From positions 62,001 to 126,000 of IMG/VR virus record IMGVR_UViG_3300047157_000197: 64,000 nt of DNA. The stretch is one strand, 5' to 3'. Positions 44,533 to 58,056 of the stretch are shown here, one piece after another. The notes under the pieces were generated by a model that was given only the letters and a program-made list of their open reading frames with translations, was not told the origin of the DNA and did no database searches. Each line of letters starts with the position of its first letter. Positions within the stretch are counted from its first letter, which is position 1. Position numbers and translations under genes: made by a program.

Positions 44533-44922
44533 ATGATATCATTAAAAAATTTACTTAACGAAGAAATACACACAGAAGAATATACTGTGGAAAATTATCA
44601 CGATATAAAAGAATTCTGTGAATTCATGAAAGAATACAAATCTGATATGAATGAAGCTGAGTATCAAGGTAGAACAGTTAAACTTGGAAAACCAATGCAA
44701 GGTGATACTAAGAAATTCAAAGTATATGTCAAAAACCCCAAAGGTAATGTAGTAAAAGTAAACTTTGGACATGGAGGAAGTTCAGCAAAGAAATCAGGAG
44801 AAAAAACAATGTCTATTCGAAAGAATAATCCAGATGCAAGAAAAGCATTTAGAGCTAGACACAATTGTGATTCACCAGGTCCAAGACACAAAGCAAGATA
44901 CTGGTCTTGTAGAAAATGGTAA
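44533..44922 (+). CDS. Small basic head-associated protein with acidic leader
   Basis: MISLKNLLNE leader, DMNE/AEYQGRTVKLGKP...FRARHNCD...YWSCRKW. Confidence 0.6.
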   Translation: MISLKNLLNEEIHTEEYTVENYHDIKEFCEFMKEYKSDMNEAEYQGRTVKLGKPMQGDTKKFKVYVKNPKGNVVKVNFGHGGSSAKKSGEKTMSIRKNNPDARKAFRARHNCDSPGPRHKARYWSCRKW

Positions 44923-44963
44923 AACAAAAACAAATAAAGGTTATAATTTAAATTAGGAACAAA

Positions 44964-46700
44964 ATGGCAGATACTTCATTTTTTGGTAGATTAACGAAAC
45001 TCTTTCGTACTCAAGCAGTTGTTACTGTTGATAAAGAGGGTAAGAGAAAAGTAATTGATACCGATGAAAGACAACAAACTAACTTATCTTCTTTAAGAGA
45101 TAGGTACACGAAACTACAAAAAGGTTTCTATGAACAAGCAGGTGGTGCTCAATCAATGGCATACCAACAAGTTCGTAGAGAAGTTTTTAGAGATTTTGAT
45201 GCAATGGATAATGACCCAATATTAGCATCAGCTCTTGATATATACGCAGATGAATCAACACTAAAAAATGAATTTGGTGATACTCTTGGAATTGTATCTG
45301 ATAATCAACAAGTACAAGAAATATTAAGAAACTTATTTTATGATGTTCTTAATATTGAATTCAACTTATGGCCATGGGTAAGAAATATGTGTAAGTATGG
45401 AGATTTCTTCTTAGGTTTAGAAATCGCTGAAGGTAAAGGTATTGTTAACGTTACACCTCATTCAGTTTACAACACAGAAAGATTAGAAAGAACAGACCCA
45501 TCGAATCCAAACTCAGTAAAGTTTAAAATTACTGAAGACCCAAATGGAAAAGAACAATACGAAAACTTTGAAGTTGCTCACTTTAGATTATTAGCAGATA
45601 CAAACTGGTTACCATATGGTAAATCTATGATTGAGAATGGACGAAGATTGTGGAAACAATTATCTTTAATGGAAGATGCAATGTTAATCCATAGAATTAT
45701 GAGAGCACCTGAAAAGAGAGTTTTCAAAGTAGATATAGGAAACATACCTCCAACAGAAGTAGATAACTATATGCAAAGAATTATGAACAAGATGAAGAAA
45801 GTTCCTTTTGTTGATAGAAATACTGGTGATTACAACTTAAAGTACAATATGCAAAACCTAACAGAAGATTTTTATCTACCTGTTCGTGGTGGTGATAGTG
45901 GAACCAATATTGAAAATCTTGCTGGTTTAGAATATGCAAGTATTGAGGATATTGATTATCTAAAAAACAAATTATTTGCAGCTCTAAAGATTCCAAAAGC
46001 TTATTTAGGATATGAAGAAAATGTAGGTGGTAAAGCAACTCTTGCTGCAGAAGATGTTAGATTCGCAAGAACAATAGAAAGAATACAAAGAACCGTAGTA
46101 TCTGAATTAACTAAAATTGCAATAGTACATTTATATGCACAAGGAGTTACTGATTCAGAAATGACAAACTTTGAATTACAATTAGTAAATCCATCTTTTA
46201 TTTACGAACAAGAAAAATTAAATCTTTGGAGTGAAAAAATTAGATTAGCTCAAGATATACAAGGTCTTAATATGTTATCTAAAGATTGGGTATATGATAA
46301 TGTATTTAAATTATCAGATGGAGAATCCGATGAACAAAGAGTTCAGATGTTAGATGATTTAAAAGATAGATATAGATTCCGTTCTATTGAAGATGAGGGT
46401 AATGACCCTGCACAAGAAGATGAAGAGCCAGATGATATTGAGGAATCAATTGAAAAACTAAAACAAGAAATAAAAGATAAAGGTGGTAGACCGAAAGAAG
46501 GTGGAACATATGGAAAAGATAAACACCCATATGGAAGAGACCCTTTAGGAGATAAAGAAAGAAAAGATGCTAAAAGAAACACAACTTCTGAAGAAAAAGC
46601 TATACAATATATTAATGGTATTGCATCAAAAAGAAAATATTTACATGAATTAAAAGGTATGTTAGATGAGGAGAATATCCTCAAAGATACTGAAAATTAA
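44964..46700 (+). CDS. Portal protein (T4 gp20-like)
   Basis: LMEDAMLIHRIMRAPEKRVFKVDIGNIP, EDFYLPVRGG, ALKIPKAYL. Confidence 0.95.
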   Translation: MADTSFFGRLTKLFRTQAVVTVDKEGKRKVIDTDERQQTNLSSLRDRYTKLQKGFYEQAGGAQSMAYQQVRREVFRDFDAMDNDPILASALDIYADESTLKNEFGDTLGIVSDNQQVQEILRNLFYDVLNIEFNLWPWVRNMCKYGDFFLGLEIAEGKGIVNVTPHSVYNTERLERTDPSNPNSVKFKITEDPNGKEQYENFEVAHFRLLADTNWLPYGKSMIENGRRLWKQLSLMEDAMLIHRIMRAPEKRVFKVDIGNIPPTEVDNYMQRIMNKMKKVPFVDRNTGDYNLKYNMQNLTEDFYLPVRGGDSGTNIENLAGLEYASIEDIDYLKNKLFAALKIPKAYLGYEENVGGKATLAAEDVRFARTIERIQRTVVSELTKIAIVHLYAQGVTDSEMTNFELQLVNPSFIYEQEKLNLWSEKIRLAQDIQGLNMLSKDWVYDNVFKLSDGESDEQRVQMLDDLKDRYRFRSIEDEGNDPAQEDEEPDDIEESIEKLKQEIKDKGGRPKEGGTYGKDKHPYGRDPLGDKERKDAKRNTTSEEKAIQYINGIASKRKYLHELKGMLDEENILKDTEN

Positions 46701-46718
46701 TTAATCTTATATAATTTT

Positions 46719-46727
46719 ATATTTATA
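46719..46727 (+). promoter_or_regulatory. ATATTTATA putative promoter
   Basis: Intergenic copy. Confidence 0.6.
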
Positions 46728-46766
46728 TAAGGGAAATTTACTATATCATAATAGGAAAAAATAACG

Positions 46767-47639
46767 ATGAAAAAAATAAAACACTCAAAATTTAAGAATA
46801 CTGGTTTTCTTTTTGAGCTTTTAACTCGACAAATTACCATGGAAATACTAAATGGTAGTGAGGAAAAGGCTAAAGGAATAATTAAAGAATTCTATGGCAG
46901 AGGAACAGAATTATCTAAAGAACTTAGATTATTTAACCTTTTAATAAATGAAAGATATAATACAGAATCAAAGGCTGAAAAGTTTATTGATGCTATTTTA
47001 GAAGCACATACTAAAATAAATTATAAAACAATTCAACGAGAAAAATATAATCTTATTAAATCTATTAAAGAAAATTTTGAAATAAATAATTTTTTATCAT
47101 CTCCCGTAACAAATTATAAAATTTTAGCATCAATTCATAAATTATTTGAAGGTAAAAAGAATAATATTCTTGATGTTAAAGATGTATTTAATTCTAAAAT
47201 AACTATTGTAGAGCACATTTCATCGAATTCCCAAATTACAAAAAATGCTAAACAAGATAAATTAGTTGAAGAATACAAAAAACAAGAAAAAGACCTTAGA
47301 TTGTTGACATATAAGATTCTTGTTGAAACTTTTAACAAAAAATATACTACTTTAGATAAATCACAAAAAGGATTATTAAGAGAGTATATTAATAATGTTA
47401 CTAACACATCAAAGTTTAATGAATATTTTGAATCTCAGTTAATTGAAACAATCACATCTTTACATTCAATGTATAAAGGTATGAAAGATAAGATTACAAA
47501 AATAAAGTTGAGAGAAACAATAAATGTTTTGAAAAAACAGAAAATCGGTAAGAAAATTACAGATGAACAAGTTTCAGCTTTAATGATGTCTTATGAGTTG
47601 ATTAAGGAGATAAAAAATGTCAATGGAACAAAATCTTAA
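46767..47639 (+). CDS. Head-region helical protein (prohead core-like)
   Basis: KHSKFKNTGFLFELL N-terminus; position after portal. Confidence 0.5.
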   Translation: MKKIKHSKFKNTGFLFELLTRQITMEILNGSEEKAKGIIKEFYGRGTELSKELRLFNLLINERYNTESKAEKFIDAILEAHTKINYKTIQREKYNLIKSIKENFEINNFLSSPVTNYKILASIHKLFEGKKNNILDVKDVFNSKITIVEHISSNSQITKNAKQDKLVEEYKKQEKDLRLLTYKILVETFNKKYTTLDKSQKGLLREYINNVTNTSKFNEYFESQLIETITSLHSMYKGMKDKITKIKLRETINVLKKQKIGKKITDEQVSALMMSYELIKEIKNVNGTKS

Positions 47640-49164
47640 TAAATTTTTAGAAGAACTTATCCAAGAAGTTGAAAAAGAATTGGATGAGGCAACTGCAACA
47701 GGCAATGTAGCTGGGTATAATGTACCTGGTGCATTTTCTAATGGTGGTGCTAAAGATAAGAAGCGTAAGAAAAAGATTTCAACTCAATTCGGTATGAAGA
47801 TAGTTGGTAAGGTGGATGAAGATTCAGTAAACGAATCAATAATTACTGAAAAACAATTAAAAGGATTAGATGGAATTGATTCTAAAACTCATCTAAAAAA
47901 AATCTCAGATAAACAAAAATTAAAAATCATACAAGGGAATGGAAATATTATTTCATTTAAAGTTCCAAAGGGAAGTAGTAGAAATTTTTGGCAAGTAATA
48001 GTAAAAGGTAAAATTAAAAAAACAAGAAATCTTCAAGGATATGTAAGGTATATTGTACCTGGTAAAATGATAAATTCTCCTTTTTTTAAATCTGAGAAAG
48101 ATTTAATTAATGGTGTTGATTGGGATTCTGTTGAACAAACTCGTAGATTTAACGAATCAGTAAAAGAAGCAACATTCAGACCAAATTCAGGTACTATGAG
48201 TGGTGGTACATATGGTTTAGATAAAAGAAAGTATGAATTAAAAAGAGATGTTAAAGGTGTACAAATCGGTGATTATACAAATGTAACATTACCTAAAGGA
48301 ACTATTATATATAACTTACCAGGTGGAGTATTTGCACACCATCGTTCATTAAAAAGCTATGAAGCTGGAATGAATAAATATTTTAATAAACCTACATTCA
48401 GAGGAATATCAATTAGAAGAGAAAAAAATGTTATTCTTTCAATAGAAAAAAATTCAAAGATATTAGAATCAGTAAACGAAATATTAGTAATAGTAGATAA
48501 GTTTGATAAAAGGAAACAAGATTACGATAAAGTTTATTACCAAGATGGTGGTAAAAGACCAGGTGATGGAGATATCAACAAAGCACAAAAAGAATTTGCT
48601 AAGTTAAGTAAGAAACATAAAGGTTTAACTCTTATATCTGTTGATAGAAACAGTAAGATGTATGATGTAAATGAATCGGTAAACGAAGCAAAAAAAACTG
48701 ACCAATGGACACTTGATGTAATAGACCACTTAGAATACTTAAAATATCCAAAAAAAGATATAGATTATATAATGGATTTTGAGAAAAAGAAGATTAAAGG
48801 ATGGAAAAGAAAAAAAGTAAATCCAACTTCGGTGGGGCAACAATTAAATATTATTCTTAAAAAACTCAGAAGGAACGAAGCAATAGAATCAGTAAACGAA
48901 GCTAAAGTAAAAAGACCAGTAAATCGTTGGTTAGAATTAAAAAACGATGATTCAATGCATGCTCATAAGAAAATGGCTATGGGATTGAAAGAACTTAAAT
49001 ATCAACTTAGAGAAACAGAAAAATTCTTTAATTGGTATAATAAGATTAAAACAATGAATGAGTTAGATTCTGATAACTATTGGAAAAGAACAAACAAACA
49101 TATTTATAAGATAAAGGAGAGATTGATAAACATCGCTCGAACTATACAGGAGATAGAAAAATGA
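47617..49164 (+). CDS. Modular internal head polyprotein with five ESVNE-type linkers
   Basis: Linkers at 47821, 48154, 48466, 48673, 48886 separate unrelated 60-100 aa basic modules. Confidence 0.7.
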   Translation: MSMEQNLNKFLEELIQEVEKELDEATATGNVAGYNVPGAFSNGGAKDKKRKKKISTQFGMKIVGKVDEDSVNESIITEKQLKGLDGIDSKTHLKKISDKQKLKIIQGNGNIISFKVPKGSSRNFWQVIVKGKIKKTRNLQGYVRYIVPGKMINSPFFKSEKDLINGVDWDSVEQTRRFNESVKEATFRPNSGTMSGGTYGLDKRKYELKRDVKGVQIGDYTNVTLPKGTIIYNLPGGVFAHHRSLKSYEAGMNKYFNKPTFRGISIRREKNVILSIEKNSKILESVNEILVIVDKFDKRKQDYDKVYYQDGGKRPGDGDINKAQKEFAKLSKKHKGLTLISVDRNSKMYDVNESVNEAKKTDQWTLDVIDHLEYLKYPKKDIDYIMDFEKKKIKGWKRKKVNPTSVGQQLNIILKKLRRNEAIESVNEAKVKRPVNRWLELKNDDSMHAHKKMAMGLKELKYQLRETEKFFNWYNKIKTMNELDSDNYWKRTNKHIYKIKERLINIARTIQEIEK

Positions 49165-49442
49165 AAATAACAAGAGAAGCATTAAAAAACATAGTTAAAG
49201 AAACTATGATTGAAGAATCTGAATATCAAGAATTTTTCAAAAGAGCCTTAGAAAAAGCAGGTAAATCTATTCCTTCTATGTCTGATGAAGAAAAGAAGGC
49301 ATTCTTTAACAAGATTGAAAAAACTTGGAAAGGTAGAGGAGCAAAAAAAGAACAAGTTTCTGAATTAACAGATGCTCAGAAAAAACTACCACCAGCACTT
49401 CAAAAGGCAATAGAGAAAAAAGATAGTAAGAAGAAAGACTAA
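49161..49442 (+). CDS. Small prohead core-like protein
   Basis: MKITREALKNIVKE leader; YQEFFKRALEKAGKSIPSMSDEEKKAFF; upstream of protease as T4 gp67/68. Confidence 0.55.
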   Translation: MKITREALKNIVKETMIEESEYQEFFKRALEKAGKSIPSMSDEEKKAFFNKIEKTWKGRGAKKEQVSELTDAQKKLPPALQKAIEKKDSKKKD

Positions 49443-49443: not shown

Positions 49444-49620
49444 GTGACTAAAAAAGAATTGTATGATATAATCAATGAGGAAATCGTTAACTTCAAAAAA
49501 GGAAAAATTAACGAAGACCTTAATGAGTCTGATAAAGATTTAATAAGAAAAATCATCAGACAAGAGGTATCAGCAATCTTTTTTGATTTATTTAAAAAAC
49601 GTAAAAGTTGGGGAGCATAA
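49444..49620 (+). CDS. Small prohead core-like protein (GTG start, not in ORF track)
   Basis: VTKKELYDIINEEIVNFKKGKINEDLNESDKDLIRKIIRQEVSAIFFDLFKKRKSWGA*, 58 aa; stop overlaps protease ATG. Confidence 0.65.
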   Translation: MTKKELYDIINEEIVNFKKGKINEDLNESDKDLIRKIIRQEVSAIFFDLFKKRKSWGA

Positions 49621-50201
49621 TGGCAAATTTATTAATAGAAACAAACCTATTCGAAGGTAGAGTAAACGAGGACGAGAGTGGAAGAACTATCGTTAAGGGT
49701 ATTTTACAAAGAGCAGGTGCAGAAAATCAAAATGGAAGGATATATCCTAAACCAATTTTGATGAGAGAAGCTAAGAAATACGAAACACTTATTAAAGAAA
49801 GAAGAGCACTTGGTGAATTAGACCATCCAGATTCTTCTGTAATCAATCTAAAGAATGTATCTCATAACGTAAGAGAGATTCATTGGGATAACGATGATTT
49901 AGTAGGAACAGTTGAGATATTACCTACCCCATCTGGTAACATCTTAAAAGAACTACTTAAAGCAGGAATCCTTTTAGGTATATCATCAAGAGGTATGGGT
50001 TCAGTAGAACCTCTATCAGGTGGTAAAGTACAAGTAGGTGAAGATTTTGAATTGATAGGTTGGGATTTTGTTTCTAATCCATCAACACATGGAGCATTTA
50101 TGACTCCGATGAACGAATCTGTTAACAAACAAGGTGAAGTTTGTAACGAGTGGTGTAAATCACAAGATTTAATGAGAGAAATTATAACAGAATTAAACTA
50201 A
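49620..50201 (+). CDS. Prohead protease (T4 gp21-like)
   Basis: NQNGRIYP, ALGELDHP, NVSH, GISSRGMGS, WDFVSNPST; likely start 49620 (track 49608). Confidence 0.95.
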   Translation: MANLLIETNLFEGRVNEDESGRTIVKGILQRAGAENQNGRIYPKPILMREAKKYETLIKERRALGELDHPDSSVINLKNVSHNVREIHWDNDDLVGTVEILPTPSGNILKELLKAGILLGISSRGMGSVEPLSGGKVQVGEDFELIGWDFVSNPSTHGAFMTPMNESVNKQGEVCNEWCKSQDLMREIITELN

Positions 50202-50204: not shown

Positions 50205-50393
50205 ATGGCATTTGATATAAAAAAATATTTAGGTGATAATGATATTAAATTAGGAACAGTAACAAGAAACGTTGCAAGTGTTCCATTTAAAGGTGGTCAC
50301 AACGATATAAGAAAAACTAATTATGATGTTAAGATTACCGAAGATGGTAAACTTGATTTATATACTCTTAAAAAGGAGACAAAGAAATTATGA
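50205..50393 (+). CDS. Small head-region protein
   Basis: 62 aa, MAFDIKKYL N-terminus resembling capsid MANFDLSKL. Confidence 0.55.
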   Translation: MAFDIKKYLGDNDIKLGTVTRNVASVPFKGGHNDIRKTNYDVKITEDGKLDLYTLKKETKKL

Positions 50394-52204
50394 TTAAACT
50401 AACTGATTTATTACAAGAACAAGATTCATTTACTGCAATCAACAAAAGTAGTGGTAACGTAACTGCATTTAAATCAAAAGATGCAAGAGACTCTGCAGTT
50501 AAATCAGGTACTCATGATAAAAATAAAGATTCAGAAGATGATGATGATAAAAAAGATACTCCTAAAGTAAACATCTTTAAAAGGGATAATGATTCCGACT
50601 CAAAGAAAAATCTTCAGAAAATGAAAAAAGATAAAAGTGGAACTCAAAAATCTTTATTTCCTGATGAGAAACCAGATTCAAAACCAACTGGTGATTCTAA
50701 TAAAATAAAAGACCCAAAAGGAATGTCAAAGGTTGTTCCTAAAGATATTGGAACAGACCCTGATAAGATGGAAGCTTGGCTATTTGATGAAGATGGTGCA
50801 ATTGGAGATGGTCAAAGTTTCGGAATGAGTGATAAAAACGCAGATGAACTTTACAATTTACATGGTAAATATGATGATGCAAAAAAAGCTGGTGATAAAA
50901 AAGAAATTGAACGAACTAAGAAAGAGTACATTGAATTTGTTTATAACAATTTAGAAAAAAATCAAAACAAACCAAAAGAACCTGAAACAAACGATTATTG
51001 GAACAAGGATAAAGATGCACCTAAGAGAGATGATAACACCGATACACAGATAGATGATGTTCAAAATAATATTGGTGATTTAGATGGCGATGAAATGAGA
51101 GATTATGCAGAATCAGATATATTCCCATATCTTAAAGGGAAAGATTTAGAAATTGCAAAATCATTAGTAGATGATATTGAAGATTCTGGTTCAGATTTTG
51201 TTAGAAGTGCTGATGTAAGGGCAGATTTAAAAGATTTATTTGATAAGAAAATGACTTTAGATTCTCCAAAAATAAAACCTTTTGCTCCAAAACCATCTAA
51301 AATTGTACTAAAGAACCTTGATACATTAGGTGACATGGCGATTGGTGATAAACCAGCATTAAATCCAAAAGATATGGGTGATGCAGAATATGAAAGAACA
51401 ATGTTACGAATGATACATAATTCATTAGAAGATTCAAACTATCATACGGCTAACAGATTTATCTTTGCAGATTTAGAAGGTAATAAAGAAAAAAGAAAGA
51501 AAGCTGATTTCAGAAATGCTCCAGATTTAGGTTCGCCTGATTATAAAGATTGGACAGAAAAAAACACTATCTATACAAAAGATTTTAATGCAGGATTTAA
51601 TAGAAAAAATGAAAGAGATGATTTATTTGATAAAGTTTCAATTGAAGCTGCTCAAAAATCAGGACATGATGGTGGACAAATTCTTGCTGGTTATCTTGTA
51701 AAACTAAGAAAAGATGGTAAAGAAGATTTAGCAAATAGAATTCAAAAATCATTTGAAGATGCTGAAAAATCTATGGATGAGGGTAAACTTAGTATCACAT
51801 CTCTTGTTAAAGAATCTATATTTATAAAAAATTTAATCAACGAAGGAACTCGTTCTCAAGTTGGTGTGATTGGTAGAAATGGTAAGATTGTTTCTGCATA
51901 CGTTCATTTCGATGGTTATCCATCAAATATGAAACCAGGTTTAAAACATCACATGAAGAACGAAAAAGATGTTCTTAAACTAATCAAGATGGGTGGGGCA
52001 AGAGGAATCTTTGATGATAAAGAAATTGAATATTACAAAAAAAGTGGTCAACCATTAAAAGGTGATTCTAAAGATATTAAATCATATATTAACGATGCTG
52101 GAGTTGAGGCTGGAGCAGAATATGTATATTTATACAATATAAAGGATAAGAAATGGTATTTCGCCGATGTATATGGTAAAAAAGAACTAAAAAAATTATT
52201 TTAA
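50390..52204 (+). CDS. Internal head polyprotein with C-terminal TRS...HFDGYP domain
   Basis: MIKLTDLLQE leader; D/K-rich middle; LINE/GTRSQVG...YVHFDGYP...AEYVYLY C-terminal module. Confidence 0.65.
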   Translation: MIKLTDLLQEQDSFTAINKSSGNVTAFKSKDARDSAVKSGTHDKNKDSEDDDDKKDTPKVNIFKRDNDSDSKKNLQKMKKDKSGTQKSLFPDEKPDSKPTGDSNKIKDPKGMSKVVPKDIGTDPDKMEAWLFDEDGAIGDGQSFGMSDKNADELYNLHGKYDDAKKAGDKKEIERTKKEYIEFVYNNLEKNQNKPKEPETNDYWNKDKDAPKRDDNTDTQIDDVQNNIGDLDGDEMRDYAESDIFPYLKGKDLEIAKSLVDDIEDSGSDFVRSADVRADLKDLFDKKMTLDSPKIKPFAPKPSKIVLKNLDTLGDMAIGDKPALNPKDMGDAEYERTMLRMIHNSLEDSNYHTANRFIFADLEGNKEKRKKADFRNAPDLGSPDYKDWTEKNTIYTKDFNAGFNRKNERDDLFDKVSIEAAQKSGHDGGQILAGYLVKLRKDGKEDLANRIQKSFEDAEKSMDEGKLSITSLVKESIFIKNLINEGTRSQVGVIGRNGKIVSAYVHFDGYPSNMKPGLKHHMKNEKDVLKLIKMGGARGIFDDKEIEYYKKSGQPLKGDSKDIKSYINDAGVEAGAEYVYLYNIKDKKWYFADVYGKKELKKLF

Positions 52205-52214: not shown

Positions 52215-52967
52215 ATGATTAAATTAACCCAACTAATGAACGAATCAGAAGAAAAGAGACCTCTTTCTAATGAAGTTAAAAAACACTTCTTAGAAATCGT
52301 TTCTACTTACAACAAGTACCAAGAATCAATGGATAGAAAATCTGATATTACTCAAGTAGCAGAAACACTTGGTGGTATTACAGAAGCAGCTAGAACATTA
52401 GCAATTCACGAAGGAGATGATTGGTTTGATAAACACACCATTAAAAGAAACATGAGTGAATTGGATAAGTTGGGTAAACAATTCGATAAAGTTGCTCTTG
52501 AAGCTAAGGCACTTGACCAAAGAATGGGTGGATTATATGAAGATATGGGACACATACTTTCAAGGTACTACAAGATTGGTGAGATTTCAGAAGACCAGAT
52601 GAAAGAACGTTTAGGAATGAACGAATCTAAAGAAGATTGTGGTTGTGGATGTAATGGAACAACTCCAGGTGGATGTAATGAATCTTTAAACGAAGAACCT
52701 GTTGCAGTATCAATGAGAAACGATGATGGTTCTATCACTACTACAATAAAAGAAGTAAATGAATTAAATGAACAAGAAACTGCATTATATGAGTTTGGCC
52801 AAAAGGTTGAAACTCTAATGGAGAAAAATTGTCCAACTGATTCAAGTAAATGGAGTTCTTACAAATCACAAGCAAAAAAGAAATTTGATGTTTATCCATC
52901 AGCATATGCTAATGGTTGGGCAGCTAAGAAATATAAAGCAGCAGGTGGAGGATGGAAGAAATGCTAA
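52215..52967 (+). CDS. Internal head protein with C-terminal YPSAYANGW module
   Basis: MIKLTQLMNE leader; helical domain; CGCGC; LME/KNCPTD...YPSAYANGWAAKKYK. Confidence 0.6.
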   Translation: MIKLTQLMNESEEKRPLSNEVKKHFLEIVSTYNKYQESMDRKSDITQVAETLGGITEAARTLAIHEGDDWFDKHTIKRNMSELDKLGKQFDKVALEAKALDQRMGGLYEDMGHILSRYYKIGEISEDQMKERLGMNESKEDCGCGCNGTTPGGCNESLNEEPVAVSMRNDDGSITTTIKEVNELNEQETALYEFGQKVETLMEKNCPTDSSKWSSYKSQAKKKFDVYPSAYANGWAAKKYKAAGGGWKKC

Positions 52968-53983
52968 TCAACGAAAGATTTAAATCTCCAAACAAAGAAT
53001 TTGAAAAAGTATTCAATCTTTTTAGAAAGAAAGATTACTTTGATGAAAAGAGTCAGGTCAAGAAAAAACAAGAAGAGTTTGTACGATTCTTGAAAAAAGG
53101 TGACCCTATGGCAACCAAAGTTTTCAAACAAAATAAAGAGGATATGAAATCTTCATTATCTTTTATTGAAGATATGGTAATGGACTATAATAAGAAAAAT
53201 CATTTTGAAGCTTTTCAAATATTTTCAAAAGCAGTAAATAATATTGAAATGAAAGATTCTAAATCAGCTGAAAAATCTGGTAACTTCATTAAAAGTAAAA
53301 TTCACAACAACTCACAAAAATACTCATTGGCAATTTATAGTGCAATTCGTAAACAAAAATTTAACAACTATAAAGATGTTCATAAAGATGTAGATGAATT
53401 GGTTTCTAAGAACGAATCAGTAAACGAAGGTAAAACAATATCTTCTTCTAAAATATCTATGATGGGTGCAAGAGTTCTTAATAAAATTAGCATCGGTACT
53501 ATATTTAATACAGAAGATGGAAAGTATGAAATTACGGATTATGGCCGACAGGCAAATGCATTTAAAGAATTTGAAGCAGAACATAATGGTAAAAAAGTAA
53601 AGGTAAAATTAACTGCAATGTATGGTGTTGAGTTAGAAGTAACTAACGATGTACGCAGCACTAGATTTAATAAAAAAGTAAAGCTAAATTCTATTATTTT
53701 AGAATCAGTAAACGAAGGTAAGAAAAGATTCAAAAGACAAGATGGTATTGGTAAAGCAAAATACACAATCTCTTTCCATGATGGAAAAAAGAAACATAAA
53801 GATGGTAGTGATTTCTTTGATATCAAAATTTTCAAAAACAAAAAAGATTTAAGTGATTTCGTTGGAACACTTGCAAAACAAGGATACAAACTAACAAGAG
53901 AATCAGTAGTTACTGAAGGTTATCAGTATTTCAAAGGCAAAATGGCTAGAGACCTTAAAGGTGACTCTGGTCGTCAAGTTTAA
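52952..53983 (+). CDS. Modular internal head polyprotein with three ESV(N/VT)E linkers
   Basis: Linkers at 53414, 53702, 53900; likely start 52961 after GGAGG; last module appears to continue in +1 frame. Confidence 0.7.
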   Translation: MEEMLINERFKSPNKEFEKVFNLFRKKDYFDEKSQVKKKQEEFVRFLKKGDPMATKVFKQNKEDMKSSLSFIEDMVMDYNKKNHFEAFQIFSKAVNNIEMKDSKSAEKSGNFIKSKIHNNSQKYSLAIYSAIRKQKFNNYKDVHKDVDELVSKNESVNEGKTISSSKISMMGARVLNKISIGTIFNTEDGKYEITDYGRQANAFKEFEAEHNGKKVKVKLTAMYGVELEVTNDVRSTRFNKKVKLNSIILESVNEGKKRFKRQDGIGKAKYTISFHDGKKKHKDGSDFFDIKIFKNKKDLSDFVGTLAKQGYKLTRESVVTEGYQYFKGKMARDLKGDSGRQV

Positions 53984-54368
53984 AAAAGGAACTAAGGTTA
54001 CTTTAGAAATTCAGCCCAACTATTATATTATTTATGGACCTAATAGAAAACAAATCAGTTTAGATAAACAAGATTTTGATTCAGAGACATTACAACAGTA
54101 TGTTATATATGAATCAGCAAACCAAGAAGTACCACAAGGATATAATCCAGTGGTAGAAGATAAAAAACAAATCAAAGATTTAGTAAAAAAAGTTAAACAC
54201 GAAAAACTATTTTACGATGTACTTGATACCATGGAAAAAAAGTATGGTAAAAACAAATACAGAATTTGGTTAGAAAAATCCCTAAAAGATTTTGGAGTAA
54301 ATCCAAAACATTACGATTACAGAACCAATGCTGGTGCAGAAGAAAAATTATTCCAATTAGGTAAGTAA
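53961..54368 (+). CDS. Probable frameshifted continuation of 52952-53983
   Basis: GTG start without SD; removing one T at ~53980 gives DSGRQVKKGTKVTLEI; contains IYE and VVE linker-like sites. Confidence 0.5.
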   Translation: MTLVVKFKKGTKVTLEIQPNYYIIYGPNRKQISLDKQDFDSETLQQYVIYESANQEVPQGYNPVVEDKKQIKDLVKKVKHEKLFYDVLDTMEKKYGKNKYRIWLEKSLKDFGVNPKHYDYRTNAGAEEKLFQLGK

Positions 54369-54712
54369 TGAGATTACAAAATATCATAGACGAGATATTT
54401 GAAGAAACCACAAATGAAGATTTGAGAAACTGGTTTAAATCCAAGTGGGTTAACATCGGTAAAAAAGATAAAAGTGGTAAACACCCCCCATGTGGTACAA
54501 GTGGTAAGAAAAAAGGATATGCAAAATGTGTTCCTGCCAAGAAAGCCGCATCTATGAGTAAGAAAGAAAAAGAATCTGCAACTCGTAGAAAAAGAGCAGC
54601 ACAAAACAAATCCAATAGAGGTGGTAAATCATCTGCAGGACAGGGTAAAAAACCTATCAATGTTTCTACACATACCAAAGGAAGAAAATCAGGAACTGGT
54701 AAAGGTTCTTAA
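54368..54712 (+). CDS. Small basic head-associated protein
   Basis: MRLQNIIDEIFEETTNE leader then DLRNWFKSKW...CG...KCVP...RRKR. Confidence 0.6.
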   Translation: MRLQNIIDEIFEETTNEDLRNWFKSKWVNIGKKDKSGKHPPCGTSGKKKGYAKCVPAKKAASMSKKEKESATRRKRAAQNKSNRGGKSSAGQGKKPINVSTHTKGRKSGTGKGS

Positions 54713-54763: not shown

Positions 54764-55072
54764 ATGAGTAAAAAGAAATCAATTGTTTCTGTTAAGGTAA
54801 TCAAAGGAGATATCAACAGAGCATTAAAAAAATTAAAAAGAAGAACCATTGACTCTGGTCATCTTCTAGAACTAAGAGAAAGAAAATATTATATAAAACC
54901 CACAACAGTTCGTAGAAGAGAAAAACAATTAGCAGTTAGAGAACAAGAAAAGGAAACTATACTTGGTAAAATAGCAGATGGTGATACTAAATTAAGATTT
55001 TATACTAAAAAACCTAAAAGAAAAGGTAACAAAAACGATAAAAATAAGAATAATGAAAAAAAAGATAAGTAA
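54764..55072 (+). CDS. rpsU: Phage-encoded ribosomal protein bS21 with basic C-terminal extension
   Basis: VSVKVIKGDINRALKKLKRR...G.LLELRERKYYIKPTTVRRREK matches bS21 core. Confidence 0.85.
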   Translation: MSKKKSIVSVKVIKGDINRALKKLKRRTIDSGHLLELRERKYYIKPTTVRRREKQLAVREQEKETILGKIADGDTKLRFYTKKPKRKGNKNDKNKNNEKKDK

Positions 55073-55099
55073 AATTATCTTTTAAAATATATATTCTAT

Positions 55100-55108: not shown

Positions 55109-55114
55109 CTGAAT

Positions 55115-55227: not shown

Positions 55228-55255
55228 CGAACACAAAACGAAAAGGTAAACTATT

Positions 55256-56413
55256 ATGGCAAACTCAAATTTGTTAAAAGAAGCTATCGCTGATGCAAAA
55301 GCTGTTAGAGAAACTGCAATTGCAAATGCTAAAATAGCTTTGGAAGAAGCTTTTACACCTCGTTTACAATCTATTCTATCTCAGAAACTTCAACAAGAAA
55401 TTGAAGAAGGTGAAGAGGAAGAAGAAAAGGTTGAAGAAAACGAAGTAGTAGAAGAAACTGAAACAGTAGTAGAAGCTGAAGTAACTGAAGACGAAGATAA
55501 AGAAGAAGTTGAAGAATCAACTGAAACTGAAACTGTATCTGAAGAAGAAGTAACTGAAGGTGAAGACGCTGAAGAAGAAAAAGAAGTAAAAGAAGAAACT
55601 GAAGTTGTTGCTGAAGAAGAATCAGAAGAAGAATCGAAAGATGAAGTATCTGAGGAAGCTGAAGAAGAAGAACAAGAAGTATCTGAAGAAGAAGATGAAG
55701 ATGAACTTGACTTAGAATCAATCATTAAAGAATTAGAAGCTGAATTAGACGAAGACTCTCACGAGGAAGAAGCTGATGAAGTTGAAGAAGAACTTGATGG
55801 TGAGGAAGAAGAACAAGTATCTGACATCGCATCTGATGAAATCGAATCTCACGAAGATGAACATCACTCTGAAGAAGAAGTATCTGAAGAAGGTGAAGAA
55901 CACTCCGAAGAAGAAGATGACATAGATGAAGAAATCGACTTAGACGAAATCCTAAAAGAAATGGGATACGGAGAAGAAGATGAATCTGATGAAGAAGAAG
56001 TTTCTGAAGAAGTTGTAGAAGAAACTAACGAACTTGAAGAAGTAAAATCAGAGCTTACAGAAGCAATGAGTACAATCAAGGAACTTAAATCTACAATCAA
56101 CGAAGTAAATTTATTGAACGCTAAATTACTTTACACTAACAAACTATTCCGTTCTTATGATTTAAACAATGACCAGAAAATGAAAGTTGTTGAAACATTA
56201 GATAGAACTAAGAATGTTAGAGAAGTAAAATTAGTATTTAGTACATTAGCAGAATCACTAAAAATTGGTGGAACTGCAAAAAAACAAAAACAAGCTAAAA
56301 TCAACGAATCATTCGCATCTAAACCAGTTGCAAGTACTGCTCCTACAAAGGAAGTAATTACTGAATCAACTAACACGATGGCAGAAAGATTTAAGAAATT
56401 AGCAAATATTTAA
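55256..56413 (+). CDS. Prohead core scaffolding protein (T4 gp22-like)
   Basis: LLKEAIADAKAVRE N-terminus, long Glu-rich tract, EVNLLNAKLLY, RFKKLANI end; precedes capsid gene. Confidence 0.85.
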   Translation: MANSNLLKEAIADAKAVRETAIANAKIALEEAFTPRLQSILSQKLQQEIEEGEEEEEKVEENEVVEETETVVEAEVTEDEDKEEVEESTETETVSEEEVTEGEDAEEEKEVKEETEVVAEEESEEESKDEVSEEAEEEEQEVSEEEDEDELDLESIIKELEAELDEDSHEEEADEVEEELDGEEEEQVSDIASDEIESHEDEHHSEEEVSEEGEEHSEEEDDIDEEIDLDEILKEMGYGEEDESDEEEVSEEVVEETNELEEVKSELTEAMSTIKELKSTINEVNLLNAKLLYTNKLFRSYDLNNDQKMKVVETLDRTKNVREVKLVFSTLAESLKIGGTAKKQKQAKINESFASKPVASTAPTKEVITESTNTMAERFKKLANI

Positions 56414-56448
56414 AAATTTAATTAACCCAAAAAAAAGGAAAAATAAAA

Positions 56449-58056
56449 ATGGCAAATTTTGATTTATCTAAATTAATGGAAGGAAAGAACCCACAACAAG
56501 TGATGCTAGCTGAAACTAGAGAACTTAAAGGTAAATGGGAACAAACTGGACTTCTTGAAGGTTTAGGAGAGAGAGAACAATCACAGGTATCTGTATTGTT
56601 AGAAAACCAAGCAAAACAATTGCTTGATGAAGCTACTGCTACCGGTACAGGTGGTGGAAATGAAGAGTGGAGTGGAGTAGCTCTACCATTAGTAAGACGT
56701 ATCTTCGGTGAAATTGCATCGAAAGAATTCGTTAGTGTACAACCAATGAACTTACCATCTGGACTAATCTTTTATCTAGATTTCAAATACGGTTCAGCTC
56801 AACCAGGAAACCCATCATTCAGCGGAAATTCACTTTTCGGTGGTACAGGTGCAGACCTTGGTTCAACTGATTCTGCTGTAAATGGTCTTTATGGTGAAGG
56901 TAGATTTGCATATACTGCAAATGACGTATCTGATTCAGTAGGTAATAGTGATTTAACTATCGCTTCTGCTTCTTGGGCAGATGTAAATTATGATGCATCA
57001 TTATCAGCTTCAGTTGCTGATGGTTCATTAGCTAGTATTAAATTTAACGCATCTGAATTAGTAAGACCTGATTTAGACGGTGTAAGAAGTTTTTACATCT
57101 CATCTTCAGATTTCGCATCTGCAGATTCTTATTACCCAGCACACTCTAGTGTTTCTGGTGTTGTAGGTTCAGAAGTAATTACTACATTCGCAAAAATCTC
57201 ATCTTTAGGTGGTGATTTAGCAGTTAAACATTCACAACAACCAATCGCTGCAAACAGAGGAGACTTCGAAGATGCTTCTCCATCTGAACCTGCAACTGAT
57301 ATAGGTATTCCAGAAGTTGATTTAGAACTTAAGTCTGAAGCAATTGTTGCTAAGACAAGAAAACTAAAGGCTGTATGGACACCTGAATTGGCTCAAGATT
57401 TAAATGCATACCACAGTATTGATGCTGAGGCTGAATTAACTTCAATGTTATCTGAGTACATCTCATTAGAGATTGACCTAGAAATCCTTGATATGTTAAA
57501 GTCTAACGCGTTAACAACTGAATACTGGTCTGTATCTTTAGGTGAAGAGTATGATGCAAACACAAGTGGTTGGGTTGCTGGAAGTAATTCTGCAGCTTAT
57601 ACTAAAAACTCTTGGTTCCAAACTTTAGGAGCTAAGTTGAATAAAGTATCTAACAAGATACACCAATTAACTTTAAGAGGTGGAGCTAACTTCGTTGTTG
57701 CTTCTCCTGACGTATGTACAATTTTAGAATCTATTCCAGGATTTGCAGTTTCAGCTGATAAAGATGCTTCATCTTTCGCTGCAGGTGTAACTACTGTTGG
57801 TTCTTTATCAAACAGATATACAGTTTACAAGAACCCTTATATGACTTCTAACGAAATCTTATTAGGATTCAAAGGAAGTAATTTCCTTGAGACTGGAGCT
57901 GTTTATGCACCATATGTACCGTTAATTATGACTCCACTTGTATATGACCCAACTAACTTTACACCAAGAAGAGGTGTAATGACTAGATACGCTAAGAAAA
58001 TGGTAAGACCAGAATTCTATGGTAAAATCTATGTTAAAGATTTAAACAACTTATAG
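56449..58056 (+). CDS. Major capsid protein (T4 gp23-like)
   Basis: LLENQ, LPLVRR, VQPMNLPSGLIFYL, KTRKLKAVWT.ELAQDL.A.H.IDAEAEL, YAPYVPL, GVMTRYA. Confidence 0.97.
   Translation: MANFDLSKLMEGKNPQQVMLAETRELKGKWEQTGLLEGLGEREQSQVSVLLENQAKQLLDEATATGTGGGNEEWSGVALPLVRRIFGEIASKEFVSVQPMNLPSGLIFYLDFKYGSAQPGNPSFSGNSLFGGTGADLGSTDSAVNGLYGEGRFAYTANDVSDSVGNSDLTIASASWADVNYDASLSASVADGSLASIKFNASELVRPDLDGVRSFYISSSDFASADSYYPAHSSVSGVVGSEVITTFAKISSLGGDLAVKHSQQPIAANRGDFEDASPSEPATDIGIPEVDLELKSEAIVAKTRKLKAVWTPELAQDLNAYHSIDAEAELTSMLSEYISLEIDLEILDMLKSNALTTEYWSVSLGEEYDANTSGWVAGSNSAAYTKNSWFQTLGAKLNKVSNKIHQLTLRGGANFVVASPDVCTILESIPGFAVSADKDASSFAAGVTTVGSLSNRYTVYKNPYMTSNEILLGFKGSNFLETGAVYAPYVPLIMTPLVYDPTNFTPRRGVMTRYAKKMVRPEFYGKIYVKDLNNL

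What the first reader, a model, noticed from the sequence alone, without database searches (positions are those of the whole stretch)
44533..56500. Shared capsid-targeting leader on about ten head-region genes
MISLKNLLNE (44533), MEQNLNKFLEELIQE (47623), MKITREALKNIVKE (49161), VTKKELYDIINE (49444), MANLLIE (49620), MIKLTDLLQE (50390), MIKLTQLMNE (52215), MLINE (52961), MRLQNIIDEIFEE (54368), MANFDLSKLME (capsid) and MNKLSKFLVE (36306) all have a ~10-aa amphipathic leader ending in hydrophobic-x-E, like the T4 internal-protein targeting sequence removed by gp21. This outlines an unusually large internal-protein set between portal and scaffold.
Basis: partly seen in the sequence, partly recalled or inferred. 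Interest (0 to 1): 0.6.

Follow-up and report, generated by a model that had tools for sequence, protein, structure and literature searches.

The report
T4-style capsid leaders plus cleavable cargo polyproteins
A 276-kb T4-related jumbo phage tags most genes between its portal and capsid genes with a short N-terminal leader ending in hydrophobic-x-Glu, as T4 does for proteins loaded into the head and trimmed by its protease. Several of these genes are strings of swappable small modules joined by one repeated 15-base linker that also looks like a protease site.

Summary
The window lies in a 275,970-bp low-GC "Far-T4" jumbo phage. Its head module encodes a T4-type portal, a gp21-like S77 prohead protease with the catalytic His and Ser, an acidic scaffold and a Gp23 capsid protein. 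A hydrophobic-hydrophobic-x-Glu motif ending at residue 5-18 occurs in 11 of 16 genes of the block against 34 of 364 elsewhere (p=5.5e-8).

- The tagged proteins are unrelated beyond the leader.
- In 80 related contigs the leader's hydrophobic positions and the Glu are fixed, and an indel-prone linker starts right after the Glu.
- The 10-residue leaders share spacing (positions 4, 7, 8, 10) with the T4 IPII/IPIII targeting sequence.

- The capsid protein's conserved maturation site is Glu61, not Glu11.
- Several tagged genes are core, scaffold or protease genes, not cargo.

New findings:
- Three genes are carrier polyproteins.
- Their modules are bounded by ESVNE, encoded by one near-invariant 15-mer, and are shuffled among relatives.
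- One domain is always preceded by hydrophobic-x-Glu, whether internal or behind its own leader.
- About eight more tagged genes lie elsewhere, including a 1735-residue nucleotidyltransferase/HD/CCA-adding-like enzyme.

No cleavage or packaging has been measured.

The parts
36306..41513 (+). 1735-aa multidomain enzyme: cytidylyltransferase-like domain (aa 25-107), HD domain (823-898) and PolyA_pol/tRNA-nucleotidyltransferase head (960-1240). It carries the leader MNKLSKFLVE followed by a second site, IME. Candidate packaged enzyme.
   Evidence: Pfam and PHROGs. The leader is conserved in more than 60 IMG/VR orthologues, and homologues at 35-47% identity also carry a short leader-like N-terminus ending in hydrophobic-x-Glu. 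Mel-JY01 and immuto genes at the same place begin MGKLINILLSE and MKKLIRIVE. Leave-one-out p about 0.02.
44533..44922 (+). 129-aa protein with leader MISLKNLLNE. The predicted mature part is basic (pI 9.7).
   Evidence: 41 distinct orthologue N-termini keep L4, L7, L8 and E10, and an indel zone starts right after E10. pI.
44964..46700 (+). T4-type portal protein (gp20). No leader; included as context.
   Evidence: Pfam Portal_T4, E=2.5e-69.
47617..49164 (+). 515-aa carrier polyprotein. It has a leader with tandem sites (FLEE, LIQE) and then ELDE|ATATG, which copies the capsid protein's maturation site. Four or five internal modules are bounded by ESVNE-type junctions at nt 47821, 48154, 48466, 48673 and 48886. 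The C-terminal helical part is conserved.
   Evidence: Relatives at this slot are 157-887 aa with 0 to at least 6 inserted modules between the same N and C ends. Local match to the capsid protein's site. Fragments have pI 9.2-10.1.
49161..49442 (+). 93-aa small core-like protein, in the position of T4 gp67. Leader MKITREALKNIVKE followed by MIEE. In relatives this gene also carries appended ESVNE-bounded modules.
   Evidence: Weak PHROG match to a scaffolding protein.
49444..49620 (+). 58-aa small core-like protein, in the position of T4 gp68. GTG start here, ATG in relatives; leader (V/M)TKKELYDIINE.
49620..50201 (+). gp21-like S77 prohead serine protease. Its N-terminus MANLLIE matches T4 gp21 MNEPQLLIE, and there are phi-phi-x-E sites at residues 187 and 191 of 193.
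   Evidence: Pfam Peptidase_S77, E=8e-26. Matches PDB 5JBL, T4 gp21, E=1.8e-15. The window protein has His in GELDHPD and Ser in GISSRG; native T4 gp21 also has His in its GELNHPP motif, where the PDB chain carries Ala. The Ser assignment rests on the PDB chain having Ala there and on prior knowledge..
50390..52204 (+). 604-aa protein. Leader MIKLTDLLQE, an acidic low-complexity middle, and an internal site NLINE|G (nt 51830-51844) directly before a 119-aa basic C-terminal domain.
   Evidence: In 24 distinct homologues the domain is always preceded by phi-x-E, whether internal (position 251-486) or behind its own leader, for example MIKLKSLIQE|G and MIKLTELLKE..INE|G. The fold is confident (pLDDT 94) but has no known relative.
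52215..52967 (+). 250-aa protein with leader MIKLTQLMNE and many phi-x-E sites (6.8 per 100 aa), including ESLNE|E at residue 161. C-terminal DUF5872-like motif.
   Evidence: The site at residue 161 varies as SVNE, TITE, TVTE and SINE in 27 relatives, always phi-x-E.
52961..54368 (+). Second carrier polyprotein. Short leader MLINE and junctions at nt 53414 and 53702 (ESVNE) and at aa 319 (ESVVTE). In this genome it is split by a frame change near 53975-53990, so its conserved C-terminal domain lies in the ORF 53961-54368.
   Evidence: Relatives encode one ORF of 452-680 aa with the same N and C ends. The 66-aa module at aa 254-319 occurs in 20 distinct relatives, in at least 3 carrier types, bounded by ..E|G on the left in nearly all (the L059 copy follows a start Met) and usually by an ESVNE-type junction on the right. 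In the fold the junction is disordered.
54368..54712 (+). 114-aa protein with a two-site leader, MRLQNIIDE then IFEE. The mature part is very basic (pI 10.8) and DUF5872-like.
55256..56413 (+). Acidic scaffold-like protein (pI 4.1, 37% Asp+Glu). It begins MANSNLLKE|A and has 9.4 phi-x-E sites per 100 aa. Probable gp22 analogue that is degraded.
   Evidence: It lies directly upstream of the capsid gene as in T4. T4 gp22 begins MLKEQLIAE|A.
56449..58056 (+). Gp23-type major capsid protein. The probable maturation cleavage is after Glu61 (KQLLDE|ATATG, codon 56629-56631), and the propeptide holds further phi-x-E sites at residues 11, 22, 37 and 52.
   Evidence: Pfam Gp23, E=6.9e-76. PDB gp23 alignment. 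The site is conserved in immuto, Mel-JY01 and LR756508, whereas Glu11 is not. T4 gp23 has FLTE|AEIGG.
48466..48480 (+). Reference copy of the 15-nt junction GAATCAGTAAACGAA, which encodes ESVNE. Exact copies in the window are at 48466, 48886, 53414 and 53702. One-mismatch copies are at 47821, 48154 and 48673.
   Evidence: the DNA search found 7 matches against 0 expected. Seven of 8 ESVNE sites in the genome and 111 of 140 in relatives use exactly these codons, against 4-7% expected from codon usage. Codon identity is 0.91 at junctions against 0.58-0.69 in the flanks.

Best explanation
The phage uses the T4 head-maturation logic. Its gp21-family serine protease, built into the prohead core, cuts after Glu in hydrophobic-x-Glu motifs; here the preferred form is phi-phi-x-E or phi-N-E, followed by Ala, Gly or Ser.

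Proteins destined for the prohead interior carry a short amphipathic N-terminal leader, M-x-x-L-x-x-phi-phi-x-E, sometimes with two or three tandem sites. By analogy with the T4 capsid targeting sequence, the leader docks them to the acidic scaffolding core during assembly and is then cut off.

The tagged set has two parts:
- Morphogenetic proteins that are trimmed or destroyed: the protease itself, the acidic scaffold, two small gp67/68-like core proteins, and the capsid protein, which is cut at Glu61.
- Cargo that probably stays with the DNA and enters the host: small basic proteins, a 604-aa protein and, likely, a 197-kDa nucleotidyltransferase/HD/CCA-adding-like enzyme.

Three carriers (the 47617, 52961 and 49161 types) are polyproteins. 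Variable small basic modules are inserted in frame between conserved ends, and each is bounded by ESVNE. The protease would release them inside the head. The junction is also fixed at the DNA level as one 15-mer, which most likely serves as micro-homology for in-frame cassette exchange between co-infecting relatives.

Shown here: the motifs, their enrichment, modularity and conservation, the shuffling, and the protease homology. Inferred: cleavage, targeting, retention in the virion, injection, and the recombination role.
For: - **Protease and head module.** S77/gp21 homologue with the catalytic residues, plus T4-type portal, terminase and Gp23.
- **Enrichment in the head block**.
- **Same pattern in T4.** gp21, gp22, gp24, gp67, gp68, Alt and IPII/III start the same way and gp23 is cut at LTE|A. 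The published rule is L/I-X-E, with CTS residues 4 and 7 for targeting and 8 and 10 for processing (PMC9026906; PMC3012670). The window's 10-aa leaders have L4, phi7, phi8 and E10.
- **Modular and selected at the protein level.** No similarity beyond the leader among 18 tagged proteins, and different codons in each leader.
- **Conservation in relatives.** In 80 relatives the hydrophobic positions and the Glu are invariant, the x positions are free, and indels begin right after the Glu.
- **Capsid site.** LLDE|A at residue 61 is conserved in four distant relatives and is copied in the 47617 protein.
- **Domain-boundary evidence.** The 119-aa C-terminal domain of the 50390 protein is preceded by phi-x-E in 24 of 24 homologues, whether internal or directly behind a canonical leader. 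A 66-aa module is flanked by ..E|G on the left in nearly all of 20 contexts, and usually by an ESVNE-type junction on the right.
- **ESVNE.** It occurs only in four genes: three with a phi-phi-x-E leader or short MLINE start, and one (g234511) with only a weaker phi-x-E N-terminus, with 9 copies of SVNE against about 1.7 expected. It is followed by Ala or Gly in 107 of 164 cases, and the junction is disordered in the fold.
- **Properties of the products.** Predicted products are 5-18 kDa with pI 9.2-10.8, like T4 internal proteins, and the scaffold has pI 4.1.
- **DNA-level junction.**
- **Same leader in a distant relative.** The 484-kb phage LR756508 has it on 38 of 140 ORFs around its head module.
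Against: - There are no protein-level data of any kind: no virion proteome and no N-termini.
- Individual leaders are only moderately significant on their own (leave-one-out p from <0.001 to 0.019).
- Some orthologues lack the leader or the Glu:
  - 52961-type proteins that start MAFKSND... exactly at the predicted mature end, and one ORF that starts directly with a module.
  - The protease N-terminus is LLIN in immuto and LLID in Mel-JY01, and the scaffold has LLKQ and LLKN there.
  - A few 1735-aa orthologues have LVD or LVQ at the first site.
- The nucleotide-level fixation of ESVNE shows that part of its conservation is not explained by protease specificity.
- Which products are retained and injected, rather than expelled, cannot be read from sequence.
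- The protease-leader complex prediction gave no verdict.
Confidence: 0.7

Rival explanations
1. The tagged proteins are all assembly-core or scaffold components. They are cut to pieces and expelled before DNA packaging, so there is no delivered cargo, and the polyproteins are only bulk filler that sets head size.
For: The scaffold and the 52215 protein are dense in phi-x-E sites, at 9.4 and 6.8 per 100 aa. The 49161 and 49444 genes sit where T4 gp67 and gp68 sit. In T4 most core fragments leave the head (PMC9026906).
Against: Filler would not need dozens of distinct, well-folded, rapidly exchanged modules (at least 44 sequence families in 80 loci; confident folds). It would not need a 197-kDa multi-enzyme either. 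The predicted products are basic like the retained T4 internal proteins, whereas expelled core proteins such as the scaffold are acidic.
Confidence: 0.2
2. The ESVNE 15-mer is purely a nucleic-acid element, such as a recombination linker, a nuclease or recombinase target, or an RNA signal. Its translation happens to end in Glu, and the polyproteins are not cut there.
For: Codon-level invariance far above expectation. The element is absent from more distant relatives that still have leaders. Repeated-motif shuffling is known in T4-type genomes, in the PeSLs (PMC2839356) and the gp38 glycine-rich motifs (PMC3157838).
Against: Where the junction is not ESVNE the boundary still ends in Glu with a hydrophobic P3, for example VDE|G, MRE|G, VKE|G, IDE|G, IKE|G, INE|G and ITE. 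The same boundary is served by an ordinary N-terminal leader in standalone genes. P1' is Ala or Gly as at the capsid site. All copies lie in frame 0 of genes whose N-termini end in hydrophobic-x-Glu.
Confidence: 0.12
3. The N-terminal pattern is a by-product of composition or expression. An AT-rich genome gives Lys, Asn, Ile, Leu and Glu-rich starts, and amphipathic first helices are common, so the pattern has no targeting or cleavage role.
For: The loose motif phi-x-E occurs in 25% of internal 18-aa windows and 27% of N-termini outside the block. One high scorer, thymidylate-synthase-like by its N-terminal sequence (not scanned here), is an evident false positive.
Against: The enrichment is specific to the head block, not to other late or structural genes. 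The register is fixed with a peak at residue 10. The specific positions are invariant across relatives and are followed by an indel zone. The register is identical to that of T4 substrates.
Confidence: 0.06

Closest known systems
Bacteriophage T4 capsid targeting sequence and gp21 (S77) processing of IPI, IPII, IPIII, Alt, gp24, gp22, gp67, gp68, gp21 and gp23
   Same: - Homologous protease, portal and capsid protein.
- Cleavage motif hydrophobic-x-Glu.
- Propeptides of 7-19 residues on unrelated proteins, with hydrophobic residues at positions 4, 7 and 8 and Glu at 10.
- A propeptide of about 60-65 residues on the capsid protein, ending ..phi-x-E|A.
- An LLIE site at the protease's own N-terminus.
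- Small basic cargo and an acidic core.
- T4 IPII and IPIII share their leader even at the DNA level (PMC9026906; PMC3012670).
   Different: - The cargo proteins have no sequence relation to the T4 internal proteins or Alt.
- Most tagged genes sit inside the head module, between portal and scaffold.
- There is a strong preference for Asn at P2.
- Tandem sites occur within leaders.
- Cargo is also delivered as in-frame polyproteins with internal junctions, which T4 is not known to do.
- A 1735-aa enzyme is among the candidates.
Giant-phage head proteolysis (phiKZ, 201phi2-1, SPN3US)
   Same: A diverged gp21-type protease cuts after Glu. Many head and ejection proteins are processed, some at several sites, and propeptides contain redundant sites (PMC5694885, PMC9026906).
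   Different: The motif there is A/S/G-x-E and propeptides often exceed 100 residues. Here P3 is Leu, Ile or Val and leaders are 5-17 residues. No virion RNA polymerase or inner-body homologues were seen.
PeSL mobile regulatory cassettes and the gp38 glycine-rich motifs of T4-type phages
   Same: Short conserved sequence motifs flank hypervariable segments and appear to mediate modular shuffling between related phages (PMC2839356, PMC4122927, PMC3157838).
   Different: PeSLs are intergenic promoter and terminator units. Here the repeat is a 15-nt coding linker inside one ORF, it keeps the reading frame, and it doubles as a predicted protease site. The gp38 motifs are structural parts of one adhesin domain, not boundaries of separable proteins.
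Phage P1 Dar system, and packaged enzymes such as T4 Alt
   Same: Large enzymes and anti-defence proteins are built into the head and injected with the DNA (PMC9024508 and PMC12810830, by title and abstract only).
   Different: No homology. P1 incorporation follows an ordered protein-protein hierarchy rather than a short cleavable leader (from my own knowledge, not tested here).

Membership tests
T4-type CTS / gp21 propeptide system | A gp21-family (MEROPS S77) prohead protease with catalytic His and Ser is encoded in the head module | tested here: met
   Pfam PF03420, E=8e-26. PDB 5JBL, E=1.8e-15. His in GELDHPD and Ser in GISSRG are both present; native T4 gp21 has His at the first position, and the PDB chain has Ala at both.
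T4-type CTS / gp21 propeptide system | Substrates carry L/I-x-E followed by the mature chain, 7-19 residues from the N-terminus | tested here: met
   9 or 10 genes of the block plus 36306, and about 8 more elsewhere. T4 reference sequences were read from NC_000866. This is a sequence-level test only.
T4-type CTS / gp21 propeptide system | Hydrophobic residues at leader positions 4 and 7 (targeting) and at 8, with Glu at 10 (processing), as mapped for IPIII | tested here: met
   MIKLTDLLQE, MIKLTQLMNE, MISLKNLLNE and MNKLSKFLVE compared with T4 MKTYQEFIAE. The mapping of positions comes from PMC9026906.
T4-type CTS / gp21 propeptide system | The leader is shared by otherwise unrelated proteins (a portable tag) | tested here: met
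   All-against-all BLASTP of 18 leader-trimmed proteins gave no mutual hit. The same domain is found behind different leaders and junctions.
T4-type CTS / gp21 propeptide system | The major capsid protein loses an N-terminal propeptide of about 65 residues at phi-x-E|A | tested here: met
   KQLLDE|ATATG at residue 61 is conserved in immuto, Mel-JY01 and LR756508, and lies just upstream of the segment that aligns with T4 gp23 residue 84 onward, as T4's LTE|A (residue 65) does. Cleavage itself was not observed.
T4-type CTS / gp21 propeptide system | The leader is removed in virions, and it suffices to load a foreign protein into the head | not testable with these tools
   This needs virion N-terminomics and reporter fusions. 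The protease-leader complex prediction gave no verdict.
phiKZ/SPN3US-type giant-phage head processing | Cleavage motif A/S/G-x-E and long propeptides (often over 100 aa) | tested here: not met
   P3 is Leu, Ile, Val, Met or Phe at all predicted sites, and leaders are 5-17 residues. The motif definition comes from PMC5694885.
PeSL-type mobile cassettes | The repeated unit is an intergenic promoter plus a terminator stem-loop flanking whole genes | tested here: not met
   All copies of the 15-mer lie in frame 0 inside ORFs, with no conserved flanks. Only the principle is shared, a repeated motif at shuffling breakpoints.

The most novel reading that the evidence does not exclude
This abundant uncultured Far-T4 jumbo-phage clade may run a "capsid cargo cassette" system. 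One 15-nt sequence, GAATCAGTAAACGAA (ESVNE), would be both the prohead-protease cleavage site and the recombination linker. With it, dozens of small basic effector modules could be swapped in frame into a few carrier polyproteins, loaded into the head through the carrier's leader and core-binding ends, cut free by the protease, and injected. A packaged 197-kDa nucleotidyltransferase/HD/CCA-adding-type enzyme would travel the same way. The arrangement would work like an integron for injected proteins.
Probability: 0.35. Interest if true: 0.8.

Novelty: new variant of a known kind. Interest (0 to 1): 0.62.

Why it matters
**Predicting virion cargo.** If the leader rule holds, a simple sequence rule predicts which proteins of a widespread, uncultured group of aquatic jumbo phages are packed into the head and delivered to the host. 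More than 550 related contigs were found in IMG/VR. The same rule flags dozens of candidates in a 484-kb huge phage.

**Fast diversification of injected proteins.** The polyprotein cassettes would be a previously undescribed way for a phage to vary its injected proteins quickly. The hypervariability points to an arms race with host defences.

**A possible packaged RNA or nucleotide enzyme.** A packaged tRNA-nucleotidyltransferase/HD enzyme would suggest that the phage brings RNA-repair or nucleotide-modifying activity with its DNA.

**Practical use.** Short leaders and junctions of this kind are natural parts for loading foreign proteins into large capsids, as is already done with the T4 leader.

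Tried and rejected
- **Nucleotide search.** Megablast of the block against GenBank phages found nothing. Relatives were found only at the protein level.
- **Vertex-protein idea for 47617.** I asked whether the 47617 protein is a gp24-like capsid paralogue. BLASTP shows only the 20-residue match around the cleavage site and Pfam and PHROGs find nothing, so I rejected the idea.
- **Paralogy.** I tested whether paralogy explains the shared N-termini and rejected it. Recent DNA duplication of the leaders was also rejected.
- **Protease-leader complex.** The prediction for the protease with residues 1-40 of the 50390 protein gave no verdict. It counts neither for nor against binding.
- **Function of cargo modules.**
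  - Atlas look-alikes of the 119-aa domain are unnamed viral clusters.
  - AlphaFold models of that domain (pLDDT 94) and of the 66-aa module (pLDDT 82.5) gave no significant PDB match. Foldseek E was 0.13 or worse and the best VIA Z was 4.6.
  - Pfam finds nothing in ten leader-bearing LR756508 proteins, nor in the small proteins of the second cluster, except a zeta-toxin/AAA_33 kinase-like domain in one of them.
- **ESVNE in distant relatives.** Absent from immuto, Mel-JY01, LR756508 and T4.
- **Literature.**
  - No relevant paper holds ESVNE.
  - The Far-T4 paper does not mention internal proteins, the prohead, gp21 or capsid targeting.
  - The term searches turned up nothing on these phages.
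- **Module clustering.** Single-linkage clustering over-merged because not every junction variant was split. Treat the count of 44 families as rough.

Full report
**Setting**

The window is bases 62,001-126,000 of a single 275,970-bp contig with about 30% G+C. Nearly all genes are on the + strand. The finding lies in a T4-type head module:
- large terminase, 42909-44501
- gp20 portal, 44964-46700
- gp21-like S77 prohead protease, 49620-50201
- a ribosomal protein S21 gene, 54764-55072
- an acidic scaffold-like gene, 55256-56413
- Gp23 major capsid protein, 56449-58056

By capsid protein the nearest named relatives are:
- an uncultured 484-kb phage, LR756508, at 57% identity
- Microcystis phage Mel-JY01, 53%
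- Flavobacterium phage immuto, 51%
- Rhodothermus phage RM378, 39%

This places it in the "Far-T4" lineage (PMC4360716). The three closest share the same gene order around the protease. IMG/VR holds more than 550 contigs that encode a relative of the protease. I fetched the 80 best, at 82-100% protease identity, with flanks.

Yes. All quoted N-termini are there, and most starts have an AGGAG-type ribosome-binding site at the right distance. With a crude call of 380 genes, hydrophobic-hydrophobic-x-Glu ending at residue 5-18 occurs in 11 of the 16 genes between 44533 and 56449, against 34 of 364 elsewhere (Fisher p=5.5e-8). Genome-wide, the end position of the motif peaks at residue 10, with 8 observed against 2 expected. 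In leave-one-out scoring each of eight leaders falls in the top 0-1.9% of 3223 internal control windows.

**Is it ancestry, DNA repetition or a portable protein tag?**

- Leader-trimmed proteins show no mutual similarity.
- Each leader uses different codons.
- In the 80 relatives the hydrophobic positions and the Glu are invariant or nearly so, the x positions vary freely, and an indel-prone stretch begins immediately after the Glu.

That is the signature of a short functional N-terminal element followed by a flexible linker. It is selected at the protein level and attached to unrelated proteins.

**Comparison with T4, read from the T4 record rather than from memory**

T4 proteins start as follows:

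| T4 protein | N-terminus or site |
|---|---|
| gp21 | MNEPQLLIE |
| gp22 | MLKEQLIAE |
| gp24 | MAKINELLRE |
| gp67 | MEGLIE |
| gp68 | MLLIPE |
| Alt | MELITELFDE |
| IPII, IPIII | MKTYQEFIAE |
| gp23 | cut at ..FLTE\|AEIGG |

The review PMC9026906 states the following:
- gp21 cuts after L/I-X-E.
- Propeptides run from 7 to 65 residues.
- The internal-protein propeptides (10-19 residues) are capsid targeting sequences.
- In IPIII, residues 4 and 7 matter for targeting and residues 8 and 10 for processing.
- Asp at position 10 blocks cutting but not targeting.
- gp21 itself has a conforming LIE-9 site.

PMC3012670 describes the T-even internal proteins as a diverse set that shares only the targeting sequence.

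The window's ten-residue leaders have Leu4, a hydrophobic residue at 7 and 8, and Glu10, which is the same register. The window protease matches T4 gp21 in the PDB (5JBL, E=1.8e-15). It has His and Ser at two motif positions where the crystallised protein carries Ala; native T4 gp21 also has His at the first. Its own N-terminus, MANLLIE, mirrors T4's.

1. *Capsid protein.* Its propeptide aligns with the T4 gp23 propeptide. The site conserved in all four distant relatives is KQL(L/I/V)xE|A at residue 61. Glu11 is kept only in close relatives. Glu11, 22, 37 and 52 may be extra cuts that chop up the propeptide.
2. *Not all internal proteins.* The scaffold (pI 4.1, 9.4 phi-x-E sites per 100 residues), the two small proteins in the gp67/gp68 position and the protease are morphogenetic substrates.
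3. *A false leader.* The 46767 protein scores only through an invariant internal FLFE motif.
4. *The set extends beyond the block.*
   - The 1735-aa protein at 36306 has a leader conserved in more than 60 orthologues, and homologues at 35-47% identity also carry a short leader-like N-terminus ending in hydrophobic-x-Glu, always ahead of the nucleotidyltransferase fold.
   - A second cluster at genome positions 230.5-236.3 kb and 244.8 kb holds about seven more tagged small proteins.
   - One of these is zeta-toxin/AAA_33 kinase-like.
   - Another ends in Asp instead of Glu.

The pentapeptide ESVNE occurs eight times in the genome, or nine counting DSVNE, against about 1.7 expected for SVNE. 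It occurs only in four genes: three with a phi-phi-x-E leader or short MLINE start, and g234511, whose N-terminus has only a weaker phi-x-E. These are 47617, 52961 and two genes of the second cluster.

Three lines of comparison show that these are domain boundaries equivalent to leader ends:

- *The 47617 slot.* In relatives this slot holds proteins of 157 to 887 residues. They have the same N-terminal part (leader, then ELDE|ATATG, which copies the capsid protein's cleavage site) and the same C-terminal helical part. Between these lie from zero to at least six unrelated modules (six strict ESVNE-type junctions in the longest, plus looser variants), each bounded by ESVNE.
- *A shuffled 66-residue module.* The module from the 52961 protein appears in 20 distinct relatives, in at least three carrier types, at positions 12 to 407 and with different neighbours. 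The left boundary ends in Glu followed by Gly in nearly all (the L059 copy instead follows a start Met), and the right boundary is usually an ESVNE-type junction. The boundary ends in Glu even where the junction is VDE, MRE, VKE, IDE or IKE rather than VNE.
- *The 119-residue C-terminal domain of the 50390 protein.* In 24 of 24 distinct homologues it is preceded by hydrophobic-x-Glu. This holds whether the domain is internal (NLINE|G here) or a separate gene directly behind a canonical leader such as MIKLKSLIQE|G.

Further observations:
- Across the 80 loci the junction occurs 164 times in 81 distinct proteins.
- It is followed by Ala or Gly in 107 of the 164 cases.
- In an AlphaFold model of the 66-residue module the fold is confident and the junction is disordered.
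- Predicted products are 5-18 kDa with pI 9.2-10.8, like the small basic T4 internal proteins.
- The 49161 gene also carries such modules in relatives.
- The 52961-type carrier likewise has conserved N- and C-terminal parts.
- In this genome that carrier is split by a frame change near 53975-53990, so its C-terminal domain sits in ORF 53961-54368.

**The junction is fixed at the DNA level**

- Seven of the eight ESVNE sites in the genome, and 111 of 140 in relatives, are encoded by exactly GAATCAGTAAACGAA.
- Codon usage predicts 4-7%.
- The window holds seven copies with at most one mismatch, against none expected.
- Codon identity between junctions is 0.91, whether or not the flanks are related.
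- At identical residues in the flanks it is 0.58-0.69.

The leaders show no such fixation, and the 15-mer is absent from the more distant relatives. Protease specificity therefore cannot explain all of the conservation.

My preferred reading is a dual role: a cleavage site that also serves as micro-homology for in-frame cassette exchange. In principle this resembles the PeSL cassettes and the gp38 glycine-rich motifs of T4-type phages (PMC2839356, PMC4122927, PMC3157838). T4's IPII and IPIII leaders are also identical over 30 nucleotides. I did not test the recombination role directly.

**Generality**

In LR756508, 38 of 140 ORFs in the 137 kb around the head module carry a leader of the form M(K/R)LxExKLRxI(I/V)KEEI, often with two sites. 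None has a Pfam family. Immuto and Mel-JY01 have fewer. The tag is therefore a feature of the whole lineage. The LR756508 region sampled holds many more tagged ORFs than the window's genome; no relation to genome size was tested.

**Mechanism and confidence**

| Step | My estimate |
|---|---|
| The leaders are protease-removed propeptides | about 0.8 |
| They also target proteins to the prohead core | about 0.65 |
| The ESVNE-type junctions are cut | about 0.65-0.7 |
| The 15-mer drives cassette exchange | about 0.5 |
| The 1735-aa enzyme is packaged | about 0.5 |

Evidence against:
- There are no proteomic data at all.
- Some orthologues start exactly at the predicted mature end, or lack the Glu.
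- Each leader alone is only modestly significant.

The functions of the modules remain unknown. Two confident folds have no significant relatives in the PDB.

**Novelty**

T4-type targeting leaders and Glu-specific head proteases are textbook knowledge. Finding them in a Far-T4 jumbo phage is a new member of a known kind. I found no description in the literature I could search of the following:
- the in-frame cassette polyproteins
- their DNA-fixed junction
- their shuffling between carriers
- the very large enzyme among the candidates

I rate the whole as a new variant of a known kind.

Noticed in passing
window 53950-54000 (ORFs 52961-53983 and 53961-54368): The 52961-type polyprotein is one ORF of 452-680 aa in relatives but is split here by a +1 frame change. 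The change falls at ...CAA GTT TAA AAA AGG..., a stop codon followed by an A-run. A +1 slip of the GTT codon onto TTT before the stop would rejoin the frames, in the manner of prfB. It could be an assembly error, a real mutation or programmed frameshifting.
   Followed up: partly
window 54764-55072: A ribosomal protein S21 gene (Pfam E=6e-12) sits inside the head module between the cargo genes and the scaffold. Mel-JY01 has an annotated S21 at the equivalent place.
   Followed up: no
L166+L003+L167 (LR756508 104,000-241,500): In the 484-kb uncultured phage, 38 of 140 ORFs around the head module start with the leader M(K/R)LxExKLRxI(I/V)KEEI. Most are 80-290 aa and have no Pfam family. This is a very large expansion of the tagged set.
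   Followed up: partly
genome 230,528-236,300 and 244,764-245,582 (L085:2528-8300 and 16764-17582), outside the window: A second cluster of leader-bearing small proteins, with N-termini MKLSEFKEAVKNVLRE, MIKLKNILSE, MTEKEVQKIINE, MIKLKDMIS.., MIKLTSILNE and MSLKSLITE. Two of them contain the ESVNE 15-mer. One (272 aa) is zeta-toxin/AAA_33 kinase-like. One ends in Asp (MITLKSILED), which in T4 would allow targeting without cleavage. An amidase_2 lysin lies next to them.
   Followed up: partly
window 47680-47700 and 56620-56645: The 47617 protein carries ELDE|ATATG at residue 24. This is almost identical to the capsid protein's predicted maturation site, LLDE|ATATG at residue 61, although the two proteins are otherwise unrelated.
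   Followed up: partly
window 50100-50201: The C-terminal tail of the protease contains NESVNK, a near-junction with Lys in place of Glu, and phi-phi-x-E sites at residues 187 and 191 of 193. This may relate to the C-terminal self-processing known for T4 gp21.
   Followed up: no
window 5539-8697: One 1052-aa ORF joins a calcineurin-like phosphoesterase (Mre11/SbcD-like) to an AAA_23/SMC_N ATPase (Rad50/SbcC-like). In T4 these are the two genes 47 and 46.
   Followed up: no
window 20000-36200: A long run of sugar-modifying genes. Pfam supports glycosyltransferase family 7 with a lectin-like domain and a radical SAM protein; the NAD-dependent epimerase-like and further cytidylyltransferase-like genes are judged only from their N-terminal sequences and were not scanned. 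The run lies directly upstream of the 1735-aa enzyme.
   Followed up: no
L087 (T4 65,416-66,415): The ten-codon leaders of T4 ipII and ipIII are identical at all 30 nucleotides, while the sequences diverge immediately afterwards. This is a small-scale parallel to the DNA-fixed junction found here.
   Followed up: no
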